Assembly: GCA_964019335.1 (NCBI GenBank)
Contig: OZ025674.1
Coordinates: forward strand, 62,001 to 126,000
Origin: Diplonema japonicum
Taxonomy: Eukaryota > Protista > Euglenozoa: Diplonemea
Length of the DNA stretch: 64,000 nucleotides
Reading direction: 5' to 3'
Below are positions 1 through 9,800 of this stretch, piece by piece. A program made the position numbers and the translations under genes. A model generated the notes under the pieces. The model was not told the origin of the DNA and searched no databases. It worked only from the letters and a program-made list of their open reading frames with translations. How positions within the stretch are numbered: position 1 is the first letter of the stretch; the number at the start of each line of letters is the position of its first letter.

Positions 1-725
1 CATCTGCTGAGGTTTTTCCTTTTCTTTTGCACTCATAATACTTTAAAAGTGAAAATTTTGCTTTTTCAAGGGGGTTTAAAGGGATTTTAGTCTTAAATAG
101 GCCAAAATGGCACTGTAAGGGTAAGTTCTCCCCACCCCATTTTAATAGTGATTTAGAGTCCAGCCCACCCAAAATGACCCCAAAGGTTTCACAGATTTTC
201 AATCTGCATCCATTCCTCCTATCGCTTTTCACGGAAAAACGAAAATAAAAAATGGGGTCTGGGTTATTTGTAACTTCCAAATTGAATCGTTTGCCAAAAA
301 CCATTTTAAAAAACATGTTTTTGCACGTGCGTTTTAAAAATAAAACAAACGGCGAGCATTTTGACCTATATGGTGATCAAGATTAGACTGCATTTCTGCA
401 CACAAAGTGGTGTCGGACTACTTTTTTACTTAGAAATTTAACGGGGGTTTTACGCCGCATAGGAGGGTCATTTGTTGACATTTTCTTCCGGACGAGCTCA
501 TATTAATTTTCCACTCTTACCCAGTGACAGTGCTTAGACACCGGTACACCTGAAGCACCGCTGTGCTAGTTGTCCCGCTCTCGAGCGCTAGGAGCGCCGA
601 TCTCTGCCCACAGAGGGCACGGTGTTGTTCCCATTGCGGGATATCTTTTATCCCTTTCCCCTCCCCTCCCCCGTTTTTTATTTTTCAACCCCTTCCCTGC
701 TTAGCCTACGCATTGCAGCACAGGA

Positions 726-2485
726 ATGGAGAGGAATGCAGGGACGGGGGGATCCTCAGGGGCGGGGGGGTCCTCGATGAAGGCGTTGGACGAAATTATG
801 TTGTTCGAAAAGCAAATTCATACCCTAAGCACGCAGCTGGGGAGGAAGGAAGAGGAGTACATTACCGCCCTAGAGGTCAGAGACAAGGAGCAGGTGGCAC
901 GGCTCGAGGATGAGATCAAGGAGATCACAGACAAGCGGGACTCCTTTCAGCACGTTTCGAATAAACGACGCGCCGAGCACGCAGCACGAGCGTCGGGTGG
1001 TGCAGGCCTCGTGACGGTCGTCTACACCTCTGACTTCACGGGGGCCATGTCCCTCGAGGACATCTCACGCATCACGTCGCGTTCTGTCACGCAGAACAGC
1101 CTGCTGGGTGTCACAGGGGTGCTGATGTTCAGCTTGGCATCCTGCAAGTTCCTCCAAGTGCTCGAGGGCCACGTGGAGACAGTCGGCACGCTCTTCAAAA
1201 AGATCGAAGCCGACACAAGGCACACACACATTGTGATCGTCAGGCGGCAGAACATCGATGTAAGACGCTTCCCCGACTGGCACATGCACCCCATGAACCT
1301 GGCAGAGCACGACAAGGCAGAGCAACCGCTTCAGACTGTCATGAGCCTCGTCACACAGCAGAACCACATTGCCAACCTGTGCCTGCACGCCAATATGAGG
1401 AACATCCTTGTAAAGGGAGGCAACCCTCTCTTCGTGCAGCCCAAAAAGATGAAGGCAATTGTCATGATGGTCGGCATCATCGCTTTCAACACCTTCGCGT
1501 GCATGGACGCACCTGCCTGCAGCGTGTCGAACCTCATGGCAACCTTCTCGGAGGTCGTCACGCGGTGCATCGAGGAGACAGTGGGCACTGTTATCAAGAC
1601 AGAGTCGGAAGTCATCCAGGCACAGTGGGGGTGCAGCAGCCTGAAGGATGCGAAGGCCTGTATGACGGCCATAGTGGAGTCCATTGCAAAGCTCCGTGCC
1701 ATAAGCACCTACTCCGTCGATCCTTTGGAGGCAAAGCCAGAGCTGCCCCTAGCCCAGTACTTATACCCCACAGTGAGCCTGTGCATGGGCAACGTGGTGT
1801 TGGTGCGGCATTCAACGTCTTGTGAAGTGAAAATCGATGTGGTGGGACCTGCAGTGCTGGAGTGCAAGGAGATGTTGAAGGAAGGCCTTACACGCAGAAT
1901 GCAGGCAGTGGTCTCCGGGGGGCTGACAAACACATTGGCTTTCTCGAAGCAGTACCATATGCAGGAGCTGTCGCCGAAGTGCTTTGCTATCACGTCACCA
2001 GAGCCCCCACCCGCTGACTTGGAAAAGCGGATCAACCACATGGTGCACGAGCAAAAGGTGGGCTTGCAGGACCCGCAGCTCGAAGAAACACCTGCCCCCG
2101 ACAGTGAGCTCTTCCTCGAAGAAACTGCTGAGATGGTGGAAGAGGTTCACAAGACTCCTTCTGAGCTTGTAATGCCTGCGCATCCATATCCGTCGCTCCC
2201 CCTGCATGCTCCCCTCCCCTGCGGCCCGTTCTCTGACCGCGTCGTTCTCACGGACCATGACCTTAAGACGCAGTTCGAGTCGCTGGATGTTGCCGACTTA
2301 GGTACCGTCCCTACAGAAACCTTCCTTAAGTTCTACAATAAGTTTGACAACATGGGTGTCACGAGTAATTGCAAGGTATGGTACTAACGAGACAACACGC
2401 ACAGGTGGAGTATGCCCTACGGGACAAGAAGGCTGTTTCATACGACGAGTTCTGCCTGTTCATGCTGCAGCTGGCGCAGGAGTGA
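726..2485 (+). CDS. BLUF-domain photoreceptor, bPAC-like, with degenerate class III cyclase domain and C-terminal EF-hand module (exons 726-2375, 2405-2485)
   Basis: BLUF motifs VVYTS, SVTQNSLLGVTGVL, FLQVLEG, DTRH and RRFPDWHM; PAC-type linker QPLQTVMSLVTQQNH...KGGNPLFVQP; cyclase-like fold follows. Removing the 29-nt intron gtatgg-tactaac-...acag (2376-2404) completes the EF-hand (QFESLDVADLG...VSYDEFCLFMLQLAQE*). Confidence 0.9.
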
Positions 2486-2611
2486 CAAGATCTTGGCGAC
2501 TTCTCTATCGAGGGGCCTGCCTTCTGAGAGGAAGGCTTCACCTTTAAGTTTAAGTTTTGATTTACACACTTTATTCTATTGCGATTGTGCTCCTGTAACT
2601 TGTCATAGGCT

Positions 2612-2941
2612 ATGTCCGAGCAAGAGCAGGGCGTGTACACTCGGGAGGCTCTTCCGAGTATTAAGACCGAGTGGGATCAGCAAATGGCAGAAGTAGGCCA
2701 CATGCTAAAGGATGTTGAGGTGAAAGAATCCAGTGGGACCGAAGTGCGAGGTGTGCTGACTCTGCTGGAAGGAGAGGCTGTGGAGGTGCGCATGATAGTG
2801 GGCAGAGGCGTGCTTGTGGTTGTAGGTGGGGAGGAAGTCTTCTACGACTGTATCCACACTTTTATTACAAACCGCTCGAAGCAAGGGAGGAACCTCTTTG
2901 CGAACGACCTTGTTTCTAAGCTTGGCATGCTTGCTTCTTAG
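2612..2941 (+). CDS. GSKIP-domain (DUF727) protein
   Basis: 109 aa; LTLLEG, FYDCIHTFITNRS and LFANDLVSKL match the GSKIP pattern (TTLEG...YET..ALL...S...F...L..KL). Confidence 0.7.
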   Translation: MSEQEQGVYTREALPSIKTEWDQQMAEVGHMLKDVEVKESSGTEVRGVLTLLEGEAVEVRMIVGRGVLVVVGGEEVFYDCIHTFITNRSKQGRNLFANDLVSKLGMLAS

Positions 2942-3002
2942 TTATGCATTTTGGCATCCAGTACACCACACCACACAGGGCCAGGGTTAGGTCGGATTCA
3001 AA

Positions 3003-4770
3003 ATGGATGAGGACCAGTTCCTTAACTCAGAACTAGCGTCGCATCTCACAGATATCCTTGTGACGGTCATCAGGGAGAAGCCAAATGACGGGCTGCGGTT
3101 GTTCGAATCCTTGTCTGCCTTCAGCAGGACGGGCAAGATGGTTCCAGACGCGGAAGCCAATGTGTACTCCGGCGATGACGGTGCAGGTAAGCCGATTATA
3201 ACAACCGCGGAACTAGCTAGCGTGGACTGGGCCAAGATGTTTTCTGAGATGGTGGTGCCCCCCAAGCCTGCTAAGAAAGCACCGAAGGGCGATGAGGAGG
3301 ACGAGCCAGAACCAGAGCCTGAGGAGACAGAGGACAAAGGCGAGCTCGCAGACATTATGTCCGAACAGCAGGTGTTCAACCTCCTAGGAACAGGGCTGGG
3401 TGAGAGTGAGGTGTACAGGCTCATGGTGTCCTTAAAGAGGCTGCTCGACAAGGAGCCTCTGAAGTCAGCAAGGTTCTTCGGCAAGATCCTCGCCATCAAA
3501 TGTGACTACTACATTGCAGAGACGGAAGTCGACCCTGAGCGAGAGCCCGAGCAAGAGGAAGCCGATGCAGGCGGTGATGACCAAGAAGAGGGACAGGGAA
3601 AAGGCCCCGAAACTATCCTGGAAGTGCTGCACGTGAACAAGGGAGTGAAACAGCCACCCATCCCTCAAGAGACGCCCAACCAACCTGGGTCGAACAAGTA
3701 CAGGTACTGGGTCACCACTGACCTGTGCCACTGGACCCAGCTACCGGACGTCAAGCCATGCCACATTCAAGCCTCCCGCCTTATTAAGAAAGTATGGACA
3801 CAGTAAAAAATATTAGTATCACAGCTGTTCACGGGTGATCTGACTGCAGCTGTCCAGTGCCACCCACCCTTCCCGGGCTCTGAGCAAGAGTACCTCCGTG
3901 CACAAATAGCTAGAATTTCGCACGGGTGCAAGGTACGCGGCAACACTCCACCACATACCACTACAGATCGCACCGAAGGGCATGTTCGAGACGCCAGCCG
4001 AAGAAGAAGAAGATGAGGATGCACCACCGAAAACAACACACAAGGTGTGCTGAGTTATTCACAAATAACATTCGCAGCGAGCACCTTACGAAGCCGTTCC
4101 TGAGATCACGGCAGTGCCAACCGATGAACTGCCCGACCCAGACGATGATGCATGGGGCAAAGAGGCCTTCGCCACGTGGGGGAAGGGGTATCCCAACGAT
4201 GCTCTTCTTGGGATGCAGAATTGGGTACATCTGGAACCTACATTGCTGCAGACACAAGGCCGAACTTGTGAACACATCTTCCCTAATGAAGAGGGCGAGG
4301 AAGAAGGGGAGGAGGGGGAGGGCGCTGAAAAGCCGCCCATTGAGCTTATCAACCCAATGTGCAGTGACCTGAGTCTGGATGACAAGGTGGTGTACGTGCA
4401 CCACACAACACCAGAGCACGCTGCTTGGAGTGTGAGGAAGGCTAACAGCCAGCCATCAACGCTCGCAACGCAGTCGTTTTTAGTACGTTCCCTTAGGTGG
4501 CCAGGTGCTTCCTGCTTCGCTCAGATCAACCAAGACACACCAGGTGCTCAGTTCTGTAACACATATATTGGTAACGGCCTTAAAGCAGCGTCAACAACCA
4601 CCTTCACACCACCCACACCAGTTGTCGTGGTCGCAGCATCGAGGAAGGAGCCGCTGTTGCAGACAGATTTCACGCCTGACGACGAGCTGGAATTCGCACC
4701 TCCACCACCGCCACCAGCAGCCATTAAACCTGAAGAAGAGGAAGAAGAAGAGGAGGAGGATGATAAGTGA
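3003..4770 (+). CDS. RSP4/6: Flagellar radial spoke head protein RSP4/6 (exons 3003-3791, 3825-3932, 3967-4044, 4078-4770)
   Basis: [27 protein letters not shown], spliced IKK|LFTGDL...[29 protein letters not shown] and NTYIGNGLK. Three 33-34 nt phase-0 GT-AG introns join the two ORF-track fragments in frame. Confidence 0.92.
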
Positions 4771-6866: not shown

Positions 6867-9800
6867 ATGGCGGAGTCCCCTTCCCCTTGGAAGGTGAAGG
6901 TGGAGGTTCTCGATGTGTGGGACAACGAACTGCAGATAAAGGTGGTGAGCGACTCGTTCAAGCAGATAAGCAGGGCGCGACTAATGGTTCGGGGACCGCA
7001 CTTTAATTTCGAGCGATTTTTTGAAGAGAAAGAATGCCTGGAGCCTATTGTCTTGAGTCTTCCCGAAGGGGCTAAAATTAAGTTACGTGCTTCTGGGCAA
7101 TTCAAGATACCTGGCGAGGAGCCCGAGTGGTGTGCGTGGGCTGATAGGACGATCCAACTGATGCAGCCCTTGGAAGTGTCGCAGGGCGTAGTCTTCCCCG
7201 ACAGGGTGCACCTCAGGTGGTGCGTGGGCGGGGTTGACAAGCACCACTACTCACCAATCTCCCACTACACTGTCTCTGTCGTCGACAAGCTGCGGATGCT
7301 CACAGCACCTGTCTTTGAGCGCGTGCTCGAGTCGAAGGGTCTAACGCAAGAGCTTACTGTCGATAATCTGGAACCCTATCATACTTATTTAGTTAAAGTC
7401 CGCCCCAAGCGGCAACACGGCGGTTGGGGGACATGGAGCAGCGAAGTAAAATGCCTCACACTGTACCCCGTACTTACGAAGGGCATCGAGCTGGGACAAG
7501 ACTTCTTGAAGATCATGTTCACGCGCGACACTGGTGTGGCTTTCGACAGAAGGCAGCCTTTCATGGATGCAGATGCTGACTTCCGGGAAGCCGACGCCAC
7601 GATCGAGGAGTACCGCATGAGCGTGGTCCGGCACGATGGTGCTCAAGTGTTCAGCAGGACGCTGCTGAATGCACCTCCGCATGCAAGAAATGAGTTCACC
7701 ATACATGGGCTTGAGCCAGACACAGTATTCGTGTTGAACGTTGCTGTGCTGAACGCTGTGGGTGACCAGAGCAAGACACGGAGGTGCCTGTTCAGGACAG
7801 GCCCGCCGCTGACCATACTGCGCATTAGGAAGCTAACGGCAACAGCAATGGAAGTGAGCTGGATGGTTGACGACAGGAGAAAGACCGACACGTCACTGGA
7901 GTACGACATGAAGTTCGACGACATCCCAAGCATCCCGCGCGAATACCAGCTACGACTAGTTTCTGCAACAGGCGAGGTAACAGCAACCAAGTCTGCTGAC
8001 ACTGTCCACTGGCTGCGCATGAACGAACTCCTCCCATGTACTGTCTACAACGTGCAGGTCAGGCAACGCAGCACCACGGGTCACGTTACGGATTGGAGCA
8101 GAAGCATTAAGGTCAGAACCTTGGACAAGATGATACCCATTATTGAACGCAGGAGTACCACCTTCATTGACGTGAGATGGGAACGTGAAATGGCATCCCT
8201 CATCGTGTCTGCTGCAAGCGGCGAGGTGGAAGAGAGCACTGTGGAGTACGACGGGGACGACATGGGTGAGGCACGGAAGATTATATCTACAAAAAGACCT
8301 CGTTTCAGGAACAGAGCCATCATCGACCCGATAGTGCCCATGGAGGACGCCAAGGCGATCCTTGTAGGGATAGTGAACAGGGAAGAAGAAGAGCTACTGG
8401 CACCGCAGCAGGCAAGCTATCATGGCGAAGGAGATGTGTCGTGGGGCAATGTGGCTGGTAGAGCAGATCTGTCTGCTGCTTCTGTGATCAGAGCCTTCGA
8501 CACGCCTATAGGGTCGACGCGCTTTGAGGGGTTGCTACCCGACACGGAGTACAGGGTGTCTTTGAACGAGCAGAACGACGAAGGGAAGTGGTACGGGCGT
8601 GTCTCAAAGTGCGTGACGACGCTGTCGGAAACAGTTACCGTTCTCCCCGAGCACGATATGATAACCTCCGACGTGCCGAGCATCGACACATGGTTCCACG
8701 ACGATGACGACTCCATCACAGAAAGTAAGGAGGCGGAAAACATGCTGGCGTTAAGCACCGAGCAGGCACCTGTCCGACTAGCTACAGAGGTGCAGGAAAT
8801 AGGCGAGGAGTATGCAGTCTTCGAGTGGGTCTTTAAAGACAACGCAAAAAAAATGCAGCAAACAGAGTTGCAGGGTTCCAAAGTGATGAAGTCGACCGAC
8901 GTTGAAAAGCTGAACAAGAACCCTGGCCACCAAGAATATCAGATCAAGTTATTTAGAAAGTTTACAGCTGAAGAGGCGAGCAGCAGACTGACATCCTCCA
9001 CTGTCCAGACCTTTTACTTACGCTGCAAAGGAAGGGCAACACGAATCTCTGGCCTGCTGCCAAACTCGTACTACTCTATGAGCATAGCAGTGTACAGCCA
9101 AACGGCCGGTCAATGGAGTGCTTGGAGCGCGTTCAGAACCTTCCCCACAGCAAGGCACCTTGTTCTGTACGTGCAAGCCGTTCACAGGAACTGCTGCGTG
9201 CTAAAGTGGACGAGAACAGAAGTTCCTCGGTGGGGCACTTCGGGGATGCAGCCTGTGATACGCGTTAGGAAGTACCTATTAAAAATCACAGACCTTGTCG
9301 AAGGCACGGAGAGACAAGTATCGCTCGACGATGAGGCGCACCCACGCACCACGTACTACAATTTGGCAGGGATCGAAGGGAGCACCATCTACCGCGTGCT
9401 CGTCGCACCACAATATTCCAACGGCTGCTGGGGCTCCTTTTGCGATCCTGTCGACGTGGTCTGCAATGCGCTGCCTTTTAAGATCGACTCCATCGGCGAA
9501 GCGTGCGTATCGGTCTCTTGGGAACCCACGCGTTACACGCTGTCCCGTGTGGCCAAGGTCGTGCTGTCGATCACGAACACATCGGGGGAATGGAAGGAGG
9601 ACACTGAGATCAATGTCTCGCACACTGCATACCAATTTACACGACTGCACCCGTGCACGGAGTACTCGATCAGCATCCATATTGTGGCACAAGTCACAGA
9701 CATCACACCACAACTGCTCAGTGAGCTGATGTCCGAGTCCAAGCGATGCCGAGAGTACACAAGAAAGCTAGTTACATACAACACCATCAAGCTTGACTTA

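What the first reader, a model, noticed from the sequence alone, without database searches (positions are those of the whole stretch)
726..2485. Light-sensing pseudo-cyclase: intact BLUF, catalytically dead bPAC-type cyclase and an EF-hand
Seen: all BLUF photocycle/flavin residues are present (Y100, N124, Q144, D-x-R-H, W185, M187). The linker QPLQTVMSLVTQQNH...ILVKGGNPLFVQP is the handle helix typical of single-BLUF bacterial PACs (bPAC/OaPAC type), not the two-BLUF two-cyclase Euglena PAC layout. In the cyclase domain the first metal Asp is Gly (MVG250 for FSD), KFIGD is KTESE (K291 kept, Asp to E295), and the GDxVNxAxR motif is GPAVLECKE (Asn to L378, Arg to E382). The ORF is intact with an added N-terminal coiled coil, and a hidden last exon completes a euglenozoan-type EF-hand module similar to the cytoskeletal I/6-antigen family. 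Inference: a blue-light switch that does not make cAMP as a homodimer. It may regulate active cyclases by heterodimerisation or act as a light/Ca2+-integrating scaffold, which would be a possibly undescribed photosignalling mode in a probably heterotrophic flagellate.
Basis: partly seen in the sequence, partly recalled or inferred. Interest (0 to 1): 0.92.

Follow-up and report, generated by a model that had tools for sequence, protein, structure and literature searches.

The report
Light sensor with dead cyclase domain
A marine heterotrophic flagellate, very probably Diplonema japonicum, expresses a conserved blue-light-sensor protein built like a light-activated cAMP-making enzyme whose catalytic residues are all gone, so it probably signals light without making cAMP.

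Summary
The gene is window 726-2375 plus 2405-2485, with a 29-nt intron at 2376-2404. It encodes an N-terminal coiled coil, an intact BLUF domain, a bPAC-type handle, a cyclase-homology domain (CHD) and a C-terminal EF-hand pair.

- **Fold:** the AlphaFold model superposes on bPAC/OaPAC at TM 0.84-0.89.
- **Dead site:** both metal aspartates and the transition-state Asn and Arg are replaced (G250, E295, L378, E382). Pfam sees no cyclase domain.
- **Intron:** a transcript-like contig lacks exactly these 29 nt, and orthologue C-termini match exon 2.
- **Family:** orthologues occur in Lacrimia, Artemidia and Diplonema papillatum (there auto-named "PAC alpha"). A sister group occurs in the phagotrophic euglenid Ploeotia. 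All lack the catalytic residues. They form a clade apart from Euglena PACs and bacterial PACs.
- **Selection:** pN/pS against a 1.5%-divergent strain is about 0.18.

The I/6-antigen likeness could not be tested. A heterodimer could hardly rebuild an active site. The tiny intron is normal for this genome.

Verdict: an undescribed, conserved BLUF pseudo-cyclase family, a new variant of a known kind. The scan noted this same stretch once before (s1-862285).

The parts
726..2375 (+). Exon 1 (550 codons) of the BLUF pseudo-cyclase gene, from ATG 726
   Evidence: ORF. Homology over its whole length to P0001 and the other family members. A polypyrimidine tract and AG acceptors lie just upstream, at about 650-724; reading these as a trans-splice acceptor is inference.
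765..1001 (+). N-terminal coiled-coil, two long helices (aa 14-92)
   Evidence: AF2 helices 14-51 and 54-92, pLDDT 94-97. Conserved in the orthologues and in the Ploeotia sister proteins. Mean family identity 29%.
1008..1295 (+). BLUF domain (aa 95-190) with Y100, N124, Q144, D163, R165, H166, W185 and M187
   Evidence: Pfam PF04940, E 3.5e-23. Column-by-column alignment. Family identity 46%.
1314..1442 (+). Handle helices and the invariant GGNPxFxQPK junction (aa 197-239)
   Evidence: AF2 helices 197-219 and 222-229. Aligned to the bPAC handle. The most conserved segment of the family, 49% identity.
1443..2000 (+). Degenerate class III cyclase-homology domain (aa 240-425) with G250, K291, E295, D371, G374-P375, L378 and E382
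   Evidence: phmmer to bPAC/OaPAC. Foldseek TM 0.84-0.89. Motif table. No PF00211 hit.
2001..2234 (+). Post-CHD helices and a low-complexity, poorly conserved linker (aa 426-503)
   Evidence: AF2 pLDDT below 50 for aa 476-508. Family identity 20%.
2235..2375 (+). First EF-hand of the C-terminal pair (aa 504-550). Loop DVADLGTVPTET lacks ligands at positions 3, 5 and 12.
   Evidence: Alignment with the orthologues. The orthologues hit Pfam EF-hand_7, P0003 at E 4.4e-9. The window piece has no Pfam hit.
2376..2404 (+). 29-nt GT-AG intron (GTATGG...TACTAAC...CACAG)
   Evidence: Sequence. A contig of run X1 spans 850-2487 with exactly 29 nt left out at this place. The features fit D. japonicum introns (PMC12621601).
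2405..2485 (+). Exon 2: second, non-canonical EF-hand and the conserved C-terminal ...EFCLFMLQLAQE, with stop TGA at 2483-2485
   Evidence: Translation. Alignment to the orthologue C-termini. The X1 contig ends at 2487.

Best explanation
Shown: the gene encodes a 576-residue soluble protein made of a coiled coil, BLUF, handle, pseudo-cyclase (CHD) and EF-hand pair. It belongs to an old euglenozoan family derived from single-unit photoactivated adenylyl cyclases. Its BLUF and handle are intact and are the best-conserved parts. The CHD keeps the bPAC fold but has lost both metal-binding aspartates and the transition-state Asn and Arg, here and in every relative found. The gene is spliced, expressed and under purifying selection.

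Inferred mechanism: the protein dimerises through the handle, CHD and N-terminal coiled coil, as bPAC does. Blue light acts on the flavin through the Tyr100/Gln144/Met187 switch. This shifts the handle helices and the conserved GGNPxFxQPK junction, which changes the conformation of the CHD dimer and the attached EF-hand/C-terminal module. The output is a light-dependent protein-protein interaction, as a scaffold, adaptor or sequestering partner, and not cAMP synthesis. This parallels E. coli BluF, where a BLUF is joined to a degenerate EAL domain. In this species the EF-hand pair is most likely a Ca2+-independent docking module.
For: - Domain architecture and fold.
- Catalytic positions across the family: Asp1 is G/G/E/A/T, with C in the fragment P0005 (read from its sequence; it is unaligned at this column). 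Asp2 is E/G/G/T/G/G. Asn is L/A/S/S/S/Y. Arg is E/E/R/G/K/S. No PF00211 hit in the window protein or in any orthologue.
- BLUF photocycle residues are intact in the window protein.
- Conservation by segment: BLUF 46%, handle 49%, CHD 31%, linker 20%.
- The family clade has SH-aLRT 100. It is sister (93) to the Ploeotia pseudo-cyclases and separate from Euglena PAC units, diplonemid two-unit PACs and bacterial PACs. The window's end branch is 0.55 against a median of 0.58, so there is no ongoing decay.
- Spliced transcript-like contig.
- 15 synonymous against 9 non-synonymous differences to a 1.5%-divergent strain, pN/pS about 0.18.
- The genome has three BLUF loci. None has a competent cyclase, while more than 150 BLUF-less class III cyclase domains exist.
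- EF-hand pair fold in the orthologue model and Pfam hits in the orthologues.
Against: - No biochemical data exist: flavin binding, photocycle and lack of activity are all inferred from sequence.
- This species keeps K291 and D371, the adenine-recognition pair, and an acidic E295, so nucleotide binding or weak activity is not formally excluded.
- Two relatives have damaged BLUF residues: Artemidia has Tyr to Trp, and D. papillatum has Trp to Ser and Met to Leu. The family's core role may therefore not depend on light everywhere.
- No interaction partner, localisation or dimer model was obtained.
- The RNA status of run X1 is a guess by the tool, supported only by the missing intron and the gene-sized contigs.
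- pN/pS rests on 24 differences.
Confidence: 0.6

Rival explanations
1. The protein still takes part in nucleotide cyclisation. It would act as the C2-like, substrate-recognising half of a heterodimer with one of the genome's many active class III cyclases, or through unconventional metal ligands such as E295. Light would then gate cAMP synthesis indirectly.
For: K291 and D371 align with the adenine-specifying Lys and Asp/Thr positions, and K381 lies next to the lost Arg. The genome holds more than 150 cyclase domains as possible partners. Diplonemid and Euglena two-unit PACs appear to use complementary half-sites.
Against: Asn is lost in all members and Arg in all but one. K291 is not conserved in the family, where the position reads N/T/R/T/K. 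The phosphate-loop motif is not conserved. Both metal Asp residues are missing, so the second site is dead too. Pfam does not recognise the domain as a cyclase.
Confidence: 0.12
2. The BLUF no longer acts as a photoreceptor. The protein is a light-independent structural or Ca2+-related flagellar or cytoskeletal component that merely descends from a PAC, comparable to the BLUF-like TEX47 proteins.
For: Key BLUF residues are lost in two relatives: Artemidia has Y to W, and D. papillatum has W to S and M to L. The coiled coil and EF-hand are typical of cytoskeletal proteins. The neighbouring gene encodes a radial spoke head protein, although gene order in polycistronic euglenozoan genomes says little.
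Against: In the window protein and most relatives every photocycle and flavin residue is kept. BLUF and handle are the most conserved segments, which is unexpected for a module that only needs to fold.
Confidence: 0.18
3. It is a decaying pseudogene or an annotation artefact of a former PAC.
For: Loss of all catalytic motifs. Pfam does not see a cyclase domain.
Against: The reading frame is intact over 576 codons. The intron is correctly spliced in a transcript-like contig. pN/pS is about 0.18. Orthologues with the same architecture occur in at least five other diplonemid data sets and sister proteins occur in a euglenid. The fold is predicted with high confidence.
Confidence: 0.02

Closest known systems
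bPAC (Beggiatoa) and OaPAC (Oscillatoria acuminata), single-unit photoactivated adenylyl cyclases (PDB 5m2a, 4yus)
   Same: One BLUF, a coiled-coil handle and one class III cyclase-homology domain. phmmer E about 1e-28 over aa 97-392. Foldseek TM 0.84-0.89 at 23-25% identity. All BLUF photocycle residues present.
   Different: Both metal Asp residues and the Asn and Arg are replaced. There is an extra N-terminal coiled coil of about 80 residues, and an extra linker plus EF-hand pair at the C-terminus. The protein is eukaryotic and its gene is spliced. The tree places it outside the bacterial-type PAC cluster.
Euglena PAC alpha/beta (two BLUF and two cyclase units; phototaxis receptor of the paraflagellar body)
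   Same: Same phylum (Euglenozoa) and the same BLUF plus class III CHD building block.
   Different: PAC alpha and beta are active enzymes of 860-1019 aa with two units. The window protein has one unit and no catalytic residues. It branches in a separate clade together with the Ploeotia proteins, not with the F1C1 or F2C2 units.
Diplonema (Paradiplonema) papillatum KAJ9472769.1, auto-annotated 'Photoactivated adenylate cyclase subunit alpha'
   Same: An orthologue with the same coiled coil, BLUF, handle, dead CHD and EF-hand pair.
   Different: About 31-33% identical. Its BLUF has Trp to Ser and Met to Leu, and its EF loop 1 is canonical (DLNGNGHITRGE). The database name implies an activity that the sequence does not support.
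Ploeotia vitrea EP01006_P024146 (P0016) and P0041: coiled-coil BLUF pseudo-cyclases of about 400 aa
   Same: N-terminal coiled coil, BLUF, handle and a CHD without catalytic residues. Sister clade with SH-aLRT 93.
   Different: No linker or EF-hand pair. About 21-22% identity.
E. coli BluF (YcgF): BLUF joined to a degenerate EAL domain (from my own knowledge: Tschowri et al. 2009, Genes Dev)
   Same: The working principle I propose. A BLUF sensor is coupled to an enzymatically dead second-messenger domain that signals by light-dependent protein-protein interaction.
   Different: A different output fold (EAL, not class III cyclase) and a bacterial protein. This is an analogy only and was not tested here.

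Membership tests
BLUF domain (PF04940) | Profile match above Pfam's gathering score | tested here: met
   82 bits against a cut-off of 25, aa 95-187.
BLUF domain (PF04940) | Photocycle and flavin residues Tyr, Gln and Met, plus Asn and Trp | tested here: met
   Y100, Q144, M187, N124 and W185 lie in the conserved columns of a 39-sequence alignment.
BLUF domain (PF04940) | Binds flavin and shows a ~10-nm red shift on blue light | not testable with these tools
   Needs purified protein.
Photoactivated adenylyl cyclase, bPAC/OaPAC type | BLUF, handle helix and one class III cyclase-homology domain in one chain | tested here: met
   phmmer over aa 97-392. Foldseek TM 0.84-0.89 to 5m2a, 4yus and 9f1x.
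Photoactivated adenylyl cyclase, bPAC/OaPAC type | Two metal-binding aspartates (FxD... and ...GD) | tested here: not met
   G250 and E295 in the window. The positions read G/E/A/T and G/G/T/G/G in the aligned relatives; the fragment P0005 has C at the first, read.
Photoactivated adenylyl cyclase, bPAC/OaPAC type | Transition-state Asn and Arg (GDxVNxAxR) | tested here: not met
   L378 and E382. The motif reads GPAVLECKE.
Photoactivated adenylyl cyclase, bPAC/OaPAC type | Substrate-specifying Lys and Thr/Asp | tested here: inconclusive
   K291 and D371 are present in this species, but the Lys is not conserved in the family.
Photoactivated adenylyl cyclase, bPAC/OaPAC type | Recognised by the Guanylate_cyc profile PF00211 | tested here: not met
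   No hit at E<=1 in the window protein or in five relatives.
Photoactivated adenylyl cyclase, bPAC/OaPAC type | Light-stimulated cAMP synthesis | not testable with these tools
   Needs an enzyme assay or cya- complementation.
Euglena PAC alpha/beta | Two BLUF and two cyclase units per chain, grouping with the F1C1 or F2C2 units | tested here: not met
   A single unit, in a separate clade.
EF-hand pair (PF13499) | Two helix-loop-helix motifs | tested here: inconclusive
   The orthologues hit EF-hand_7: P0003 at E 4.4e-9, above the cut-off, and the others below it. The orthologue model shows the helix-loop-helix topology twice. The window's exon pieces align to it but give no Pfam hit on their own. 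The joined protein was not searched.
EF-hand pair (PF13499) | Ca2+-ligand pattern D-x-[DNS]-x-[DNS]-G-...-E in the 12-residue loop | tested here: not met
   Loop 1 is DVADLGTVPTET, with A, L and T at positions 3, 5 and 12. Loop 2 is non-canonical in all members.
Trypanosome I/6 autoantigen family | Sequence similarity to I/6 | not tested
   No reference sequence was reachable with these tools. No paralogous EF module exists in the genome. The protein-atlas look-up gave only generic EF-hand clusters.

The most novel reading that the evidence does not exclude
A PAC-derived, non-enzymatic blue-light switch is ancestral to diplonemids and euglenids and predates the euglenid plastid. Its architecture is coiled coil, BLUF, handle, dead cyclase and EF-hand docking module. 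It controls flagellar or feeding behaviour in diplonemids, among the most diverse heterotrophs of the ocean, through light-gated protein-protein contacts. This would be a eukaryotic counterpart of bacterial BluF and a natural template for optogenetic interaction switches.
Probability: 0.35. Interest if true: 0.8.

Novelty: new variant of a known kind. Interest (0 to 1): 0.62.

Why it matters
Photoactivated cyclases are known as enzymes: the Euglena phototaxis receptor, and bPAC as an optogenetic tool.

This work finds a conserved, expressed family in which the light-sensing half and the signal-transmitting handle are preserved while the enzyme half is dead. It occurs in heterotrophic marine protists that are not known to respond to light.

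If the BLUF works, diplonemids perceive blue light and pass the signal on without cAMP. That would also show that BLUF-cyclase modules existed in Euglenozoa before photosynthesis was acquired, and it would provide a natural light-controlled non-enzymatic module.

It also corrects a misleading database name, "PAC subunit alpha", in D. papillatum.

Tried and rejected
- **The search for homologous proteins.** The single protein and the 7-sequence profile each returned only P0001, because the candidate list saturated at 8000. Even family members that were in the query alignment were missed. The exhaustive representative search was needed instead.
The ENA contigs that carry P0002, P0005/P0006 and P0041 therefore stay without a taxon.
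- **Kinetoplastid origin.** I first suspected it from the spliced-leader end and the cyclase expansion. I rejected it because of the many tiny introns and the tree position among diplonemids.
- **Repeat at 395-510 as a spliced-leader gene.** Rejected: it is a dispersed element end.
- **Rfam on 1-3000:** nothing found.
- **Literature.** Searches for BLUF or photoreceptors in diplonemids, and for pseudo-PACs, found no description.
- **I/6-antigen likeness.** No way to test it. The atlas look-up gave only generic EF-hand clusters.
- **Joined protein.** The joined two-exon protein was never searched or folded. The exons were handled separately, by reference. In one search they were concatenated only inside a script to index codon positions, and nothing joined was printed or sent.
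- **Dimer models.** No homo- or heterodimer structure prediction is offered by the tools.
Full report
**1. What is at 726-2485**

The ORF listing gives one long ORF, 726-2387 on the + strand, 553 aa. Pfam finds a BLUF domain at aa 95-187 (82 bits, cut-off 25). It finds no cyclase domain even at E<=1.

A phmmer search of all PDB chains aligns aa 97-392 in one stretch with residues 7-289 of bPAC (5m2a and others, E about 1e-28). It also matches OaPAC (4yus, E 2e-25). The homology therefore runs through BLUF, handle and cyclase-homology domain (CHD).

- The BLUF residues Y100, N124, Q144, D163, R165, H166, W185 and M187 occupy the conserved columns.
- The first metal Asp is G250. About 30 canonical PACs have an invariant D there.
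- KxxGD reads KTESE, with K291 kept and E295 in place of Asp.
- GDxVNxAxR reads GPAVLECKE, with L378 for Asn and E382 for Arg.
- The position of the substrate Thr or Asp is D371.

**2. Fold**

An AlphaFold2 model of exon 1 with this alignment has mean pLDDT 83 and is above 90 through most of aa 20-440. It shows these elements:
- two long N-terminal helices (14-51 and 54-92);
- the BLUF sheet;
- handle helices 197-219 and 222-229;
- an alpha/beta CHD reaching to about aa 425;
- a disordered stretch (476-508), followed by short helices.

Foldseek against the PDB puts bPAC and OaPAC first. E is 6e-27, the target-normalised TM-score is 0.84-0.89 over about 355 columns, and identity is 23-25%. Isolated class III cyclases and BLUF proteins come far behind.

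**3. The last exon**

After AAG at 2373-2375 the sequence reads GTATGGTACTAACGAGACAACACGCACAG, followed by GTGGAG. Removing 2376-2404 (29 nt) continues the frame into VEYALRDKKAVSYDEFCLFMLQLAQE*, with the stop at 2483-2485.

Two independent lines confirm this.
- A 1609-nt contig of public run X1 covers 850-2487 with exactly 29 nt left out at this place. It differs from the window at about 25 positions, so it comes from another strain or close species. It ends two bases after the stop. Neighbouring genes lie on separate contigs in X1 and X2. One X2 contig carries the loose 5' letters GTTTCTGTACTTTATT at 2978, which is the end of a kinetoplastid/diplonemid-type spliced leader. These runs therefore behave as transcript assemblies, although the tool only guesses "RNA".
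- The full-length homologues end ...LSFHEFSILMLRMAQD...VTYEEFSIMMLKMAQD and similar, matching exon 2.

I did not search or fold the joined protein; the exons were treated separately. In one search they were concatenated only inside a script to index codons.

**4. Organism**

The assembly has 62.5 Mb in 132 contigs.
- The spliced-leader end occurs 228 times, against 0 in the control.
- The adjacent radial-spoke gene needs three further introns of 33-34 nt to stay in frame (my reading).
- The tree places the protein among diplonemid sequences.
- The published genome note gives 62.30 Mb, 118 chromosomal scaffolds and no gene annotation yet (PMC13598402).
- The intron survey reports for D. japonicum a median intron of 41 nt, a G/GTATG 5' splice site, an A-rich tract and a CAG 3' end (PMC12621601).

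All of this fits. I take the organism to be D. japonicum or a very close relative, a heterotrophic marine flagellate. I have not proved this by a marker gene. The tiny intron is thus ordinary for this genome.

**5. The family**

An exhaustive HMMER search of 1.84 billion representatives, using the window plus P0001 profile, gave 14 proteins below 1e-30. The first six share the whole architecture:
- Lacrimia lanifica (P0001);
- Artemidia motanka (P0003);
- Diplonema papillatum (P0004/P0151 = KAJ9472769.1, named "Photoactivated adenylate cyclase subunit alpha" by its source);
- three proteins on long ENA contigs of unknown taxon (P0002, and P0005 plus P0006).

P0016, from the phagotrophic euglenid Ploeotia vitrea, and P0041 have the coiled coil, BLUF, handle and a dead CHD but no EF-hand.

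I built a tree of 64 BLUF-CHD units (IQ-TREE, quick search, SH-aLRT support).
- The window and four diplonemid proteins form a clade with support 100, on a stem of length 1.08.
- That clade is sister, with support 93, to the Ploeotia/P0041 pair.
- Euglena PAC F1C1 and F2C2 units, the diplonemid two-unit PACs and the bacterial-type PACs lie elsewhere.
- The window's end branch (0.55) equals the median (0.58). The family changed once and has been stable since.

No member has the catalytic set.

| Position | Residues across the family |
|---|---|
| Asp1 | G/G/E/A/T, and C in the fragment P0005 (read) |
| Asp2 | E/G/G/T/G/G |
| Asn | L/A/S/S/S/Y |
| Arg | E/E/R/G/K/S |

None of the relatives scanned hits PF00211.

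**6. Constraint**

Mean pairwise identity within five full-length members, by segment:

| Segment | Identity |
|---|---|
| Coiled coil | 29% |
| BLUF | 46% |
| Handle | 49% |
| CHD | 31% |
| Linker | 20% |
| First EF-hand | 41% |

The motif GGNPxFxQPK at the handle/CHD junction is invariant.

Against the X1 variant, 15 of 24 listed differences are synonymous. pN/pS is about 0.18. Within the CHD there are 7 synonymous and 3 conservative non-synonymous changes. The numbers are small, but together with the deep conservation and the expression they exclude a pseudogene.

**7. The EF-hand**

The relatives hit Pfam EF-hand families. P0003 hits EF-hand_7 at E 4.4e-9, above the cut-off; the others fall below it.

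A model of P0003 shows the helix-loop-helix motif twice, each loop with a short strand, at pLDDT 69-81.

Loop 1 is canonical in four relatives: DVNKNGKVSRQE, DTNKNGWLSKEE, DLNGNGHITRGE and DINANGWISRDE. In the window protein it reads DVADLGTVPTET, and in P0002 it reads DIKRAGFVSCEQ. Loop 2 is non-canonical in all.

The window's own pieces give no Pfam hit. The module is therefore an EF-hand pair by descent and fold, but in this species it has very probably lost Ca2+ binding.

The claimed likeness to the I/6 antigen could not be tested. The genome holds no paralogue of the module, and a language-model look-up gives only generic EF-hand clusters.

**8. Genomic context**

The genome has three BLUF loci:
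- this gene;
- a 787-aa two-unit PAC-like gene on C63, next to a dynein heavy chain, in which the second BLUF and both CHDs are degenerate;
- a TEX47-like protein on C99.

More than 150 class III cyclase domains exist, many in tandem arrays, and none is at a BLUF locus. This organism therefore seems to have no catalytically competent photoactivated cyclase.

**9. How it most likely works**

Shown:
- an intact BLUF;
- a conserved handle;
- a CHD fold without catalytic residues;
- dimer-type architecture by homology to bPAC;
- an added coiled coil;
- a degenerate EF-hand pair with a strongly conserved C-terminal helix.

Inferred: light-induced changes at Tyr100, Gln144 and Met187 are passed through the handle to the CHD dimer. 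This changes how the protein binds partners, possibly through the EF/C-terminal module. No cAMP is made.

A heterodimer with an active cyclase cannot restore a full site. One site would need this protein's missing aspartates, and the other its missing Asn and Arg. Such pairing would therefore be inhibitory or very weak. Retention of K291 and D371 in this species leaves nucleotide binding possible, but the Lys is not conserved in the family.

One caution applies. Artemidia has Trp for the essential Tyr, and D. papillatum has lost Trp and Met. Light sensing may therefore have been given up in some lineages.

**10. Novelty**

Full-text searches found no description of BLUF proteins or photoreceptors in diplonemids, nor of PAC-like pseudo-cyclases. 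The Euglena genome paper mentions BLUF cyclases only in general terms.

I rate this a new variant of a known kind: a PAC-derived pseudo-enzyme family conserved in heterotrophic Euglenozoa. The same stretch was noted once before by this scan (s1-862285), and the C63 paralogue was noted as s1-860541.

**Limits**

- The word-indexed homology search failed to retrieve known members.
- No multimer prediction was possible.
- No raw RNA reads were available.

Noticed in passing
window 395-510: The last ~110 nt of a young dispersed repeat. There are at least 223 candidate copies in the genome, and the 40 scored copies are 95-100% identical, including an inverted copy 11 kb upstream on the same contig. 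Depth in the DNA runs is about 1000 times that of the flanks. It is not a spliced-leader gene and has no Rfam match.
   Followed up: partly
window 2612-2941: A small ORF of 109 aa between the BLUF gene and the radial-spoke gene. It lies on its own contig in runs X1 and X2, so it is probably a separate expressed gene. It has only a weak GSKIP-domain hit (E 0.09).
   Followed up: no
window 2978-4770: A radial spoke head (RSP4/6-like, PF04712) gene. A spliced-leader end (GTTTCTGTACTTTATT) is joined at the AG at 2977-2978 in run X2. The frame needs three tiny GT-AG introns at about 3792-3824, 3933-3966 and 4045-4077 (33, 34 and 33 nt). These were read from the sequence and not checked with RNA.
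   Followed up: partly
L004:2721-5084 (G000:C63:326720-329083): A 787-aa two-unit PAC-like protein next to a dynein heavy chain gene. The first BLUF is recognisable. The second BLUF and both cyclase domains are degenerate, so this is a second pseudo-PAC in the same genome.
   Followed up: partly
L003:1168-1857 (-): A 229-aa TEX47-like protein with a BLUF-like domain (PF24787, E 9e-11). It is the third BLUF-related locus of the genome.
   Followed up: no
G000, genome-wide: The spliced-leader 3' end GTTTCTGTACTTTATTG occurs 228 times, dispersed over most contigs and often near contig ends, against 0 in the control. This agrees with earlier notes on spliced-leader-headed retroelements.
   Followed up: no
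P0010 (Rhynchopus euleeides), P0009, P0011; Euglena P0008/P0012: The two-unit PAC-like proteins of diplonemids and Euglena show complementary half-sites. Unit 1 lacks the metal aspartates but keeps Asn and Arg. Unit 2 keeps the aspartates but not Asn and Arg. This suggests a single intramolecular active site, as in the mammalian C1/C2 arrangement.
   Followed up: no
G000, e.g. C109, C28, C2, C103: More than 150 class III cyclase domains, many in tandem arrays of ORFs of about 700-1000 aa. This is a very large cyclase expansion.
   Followed up: no
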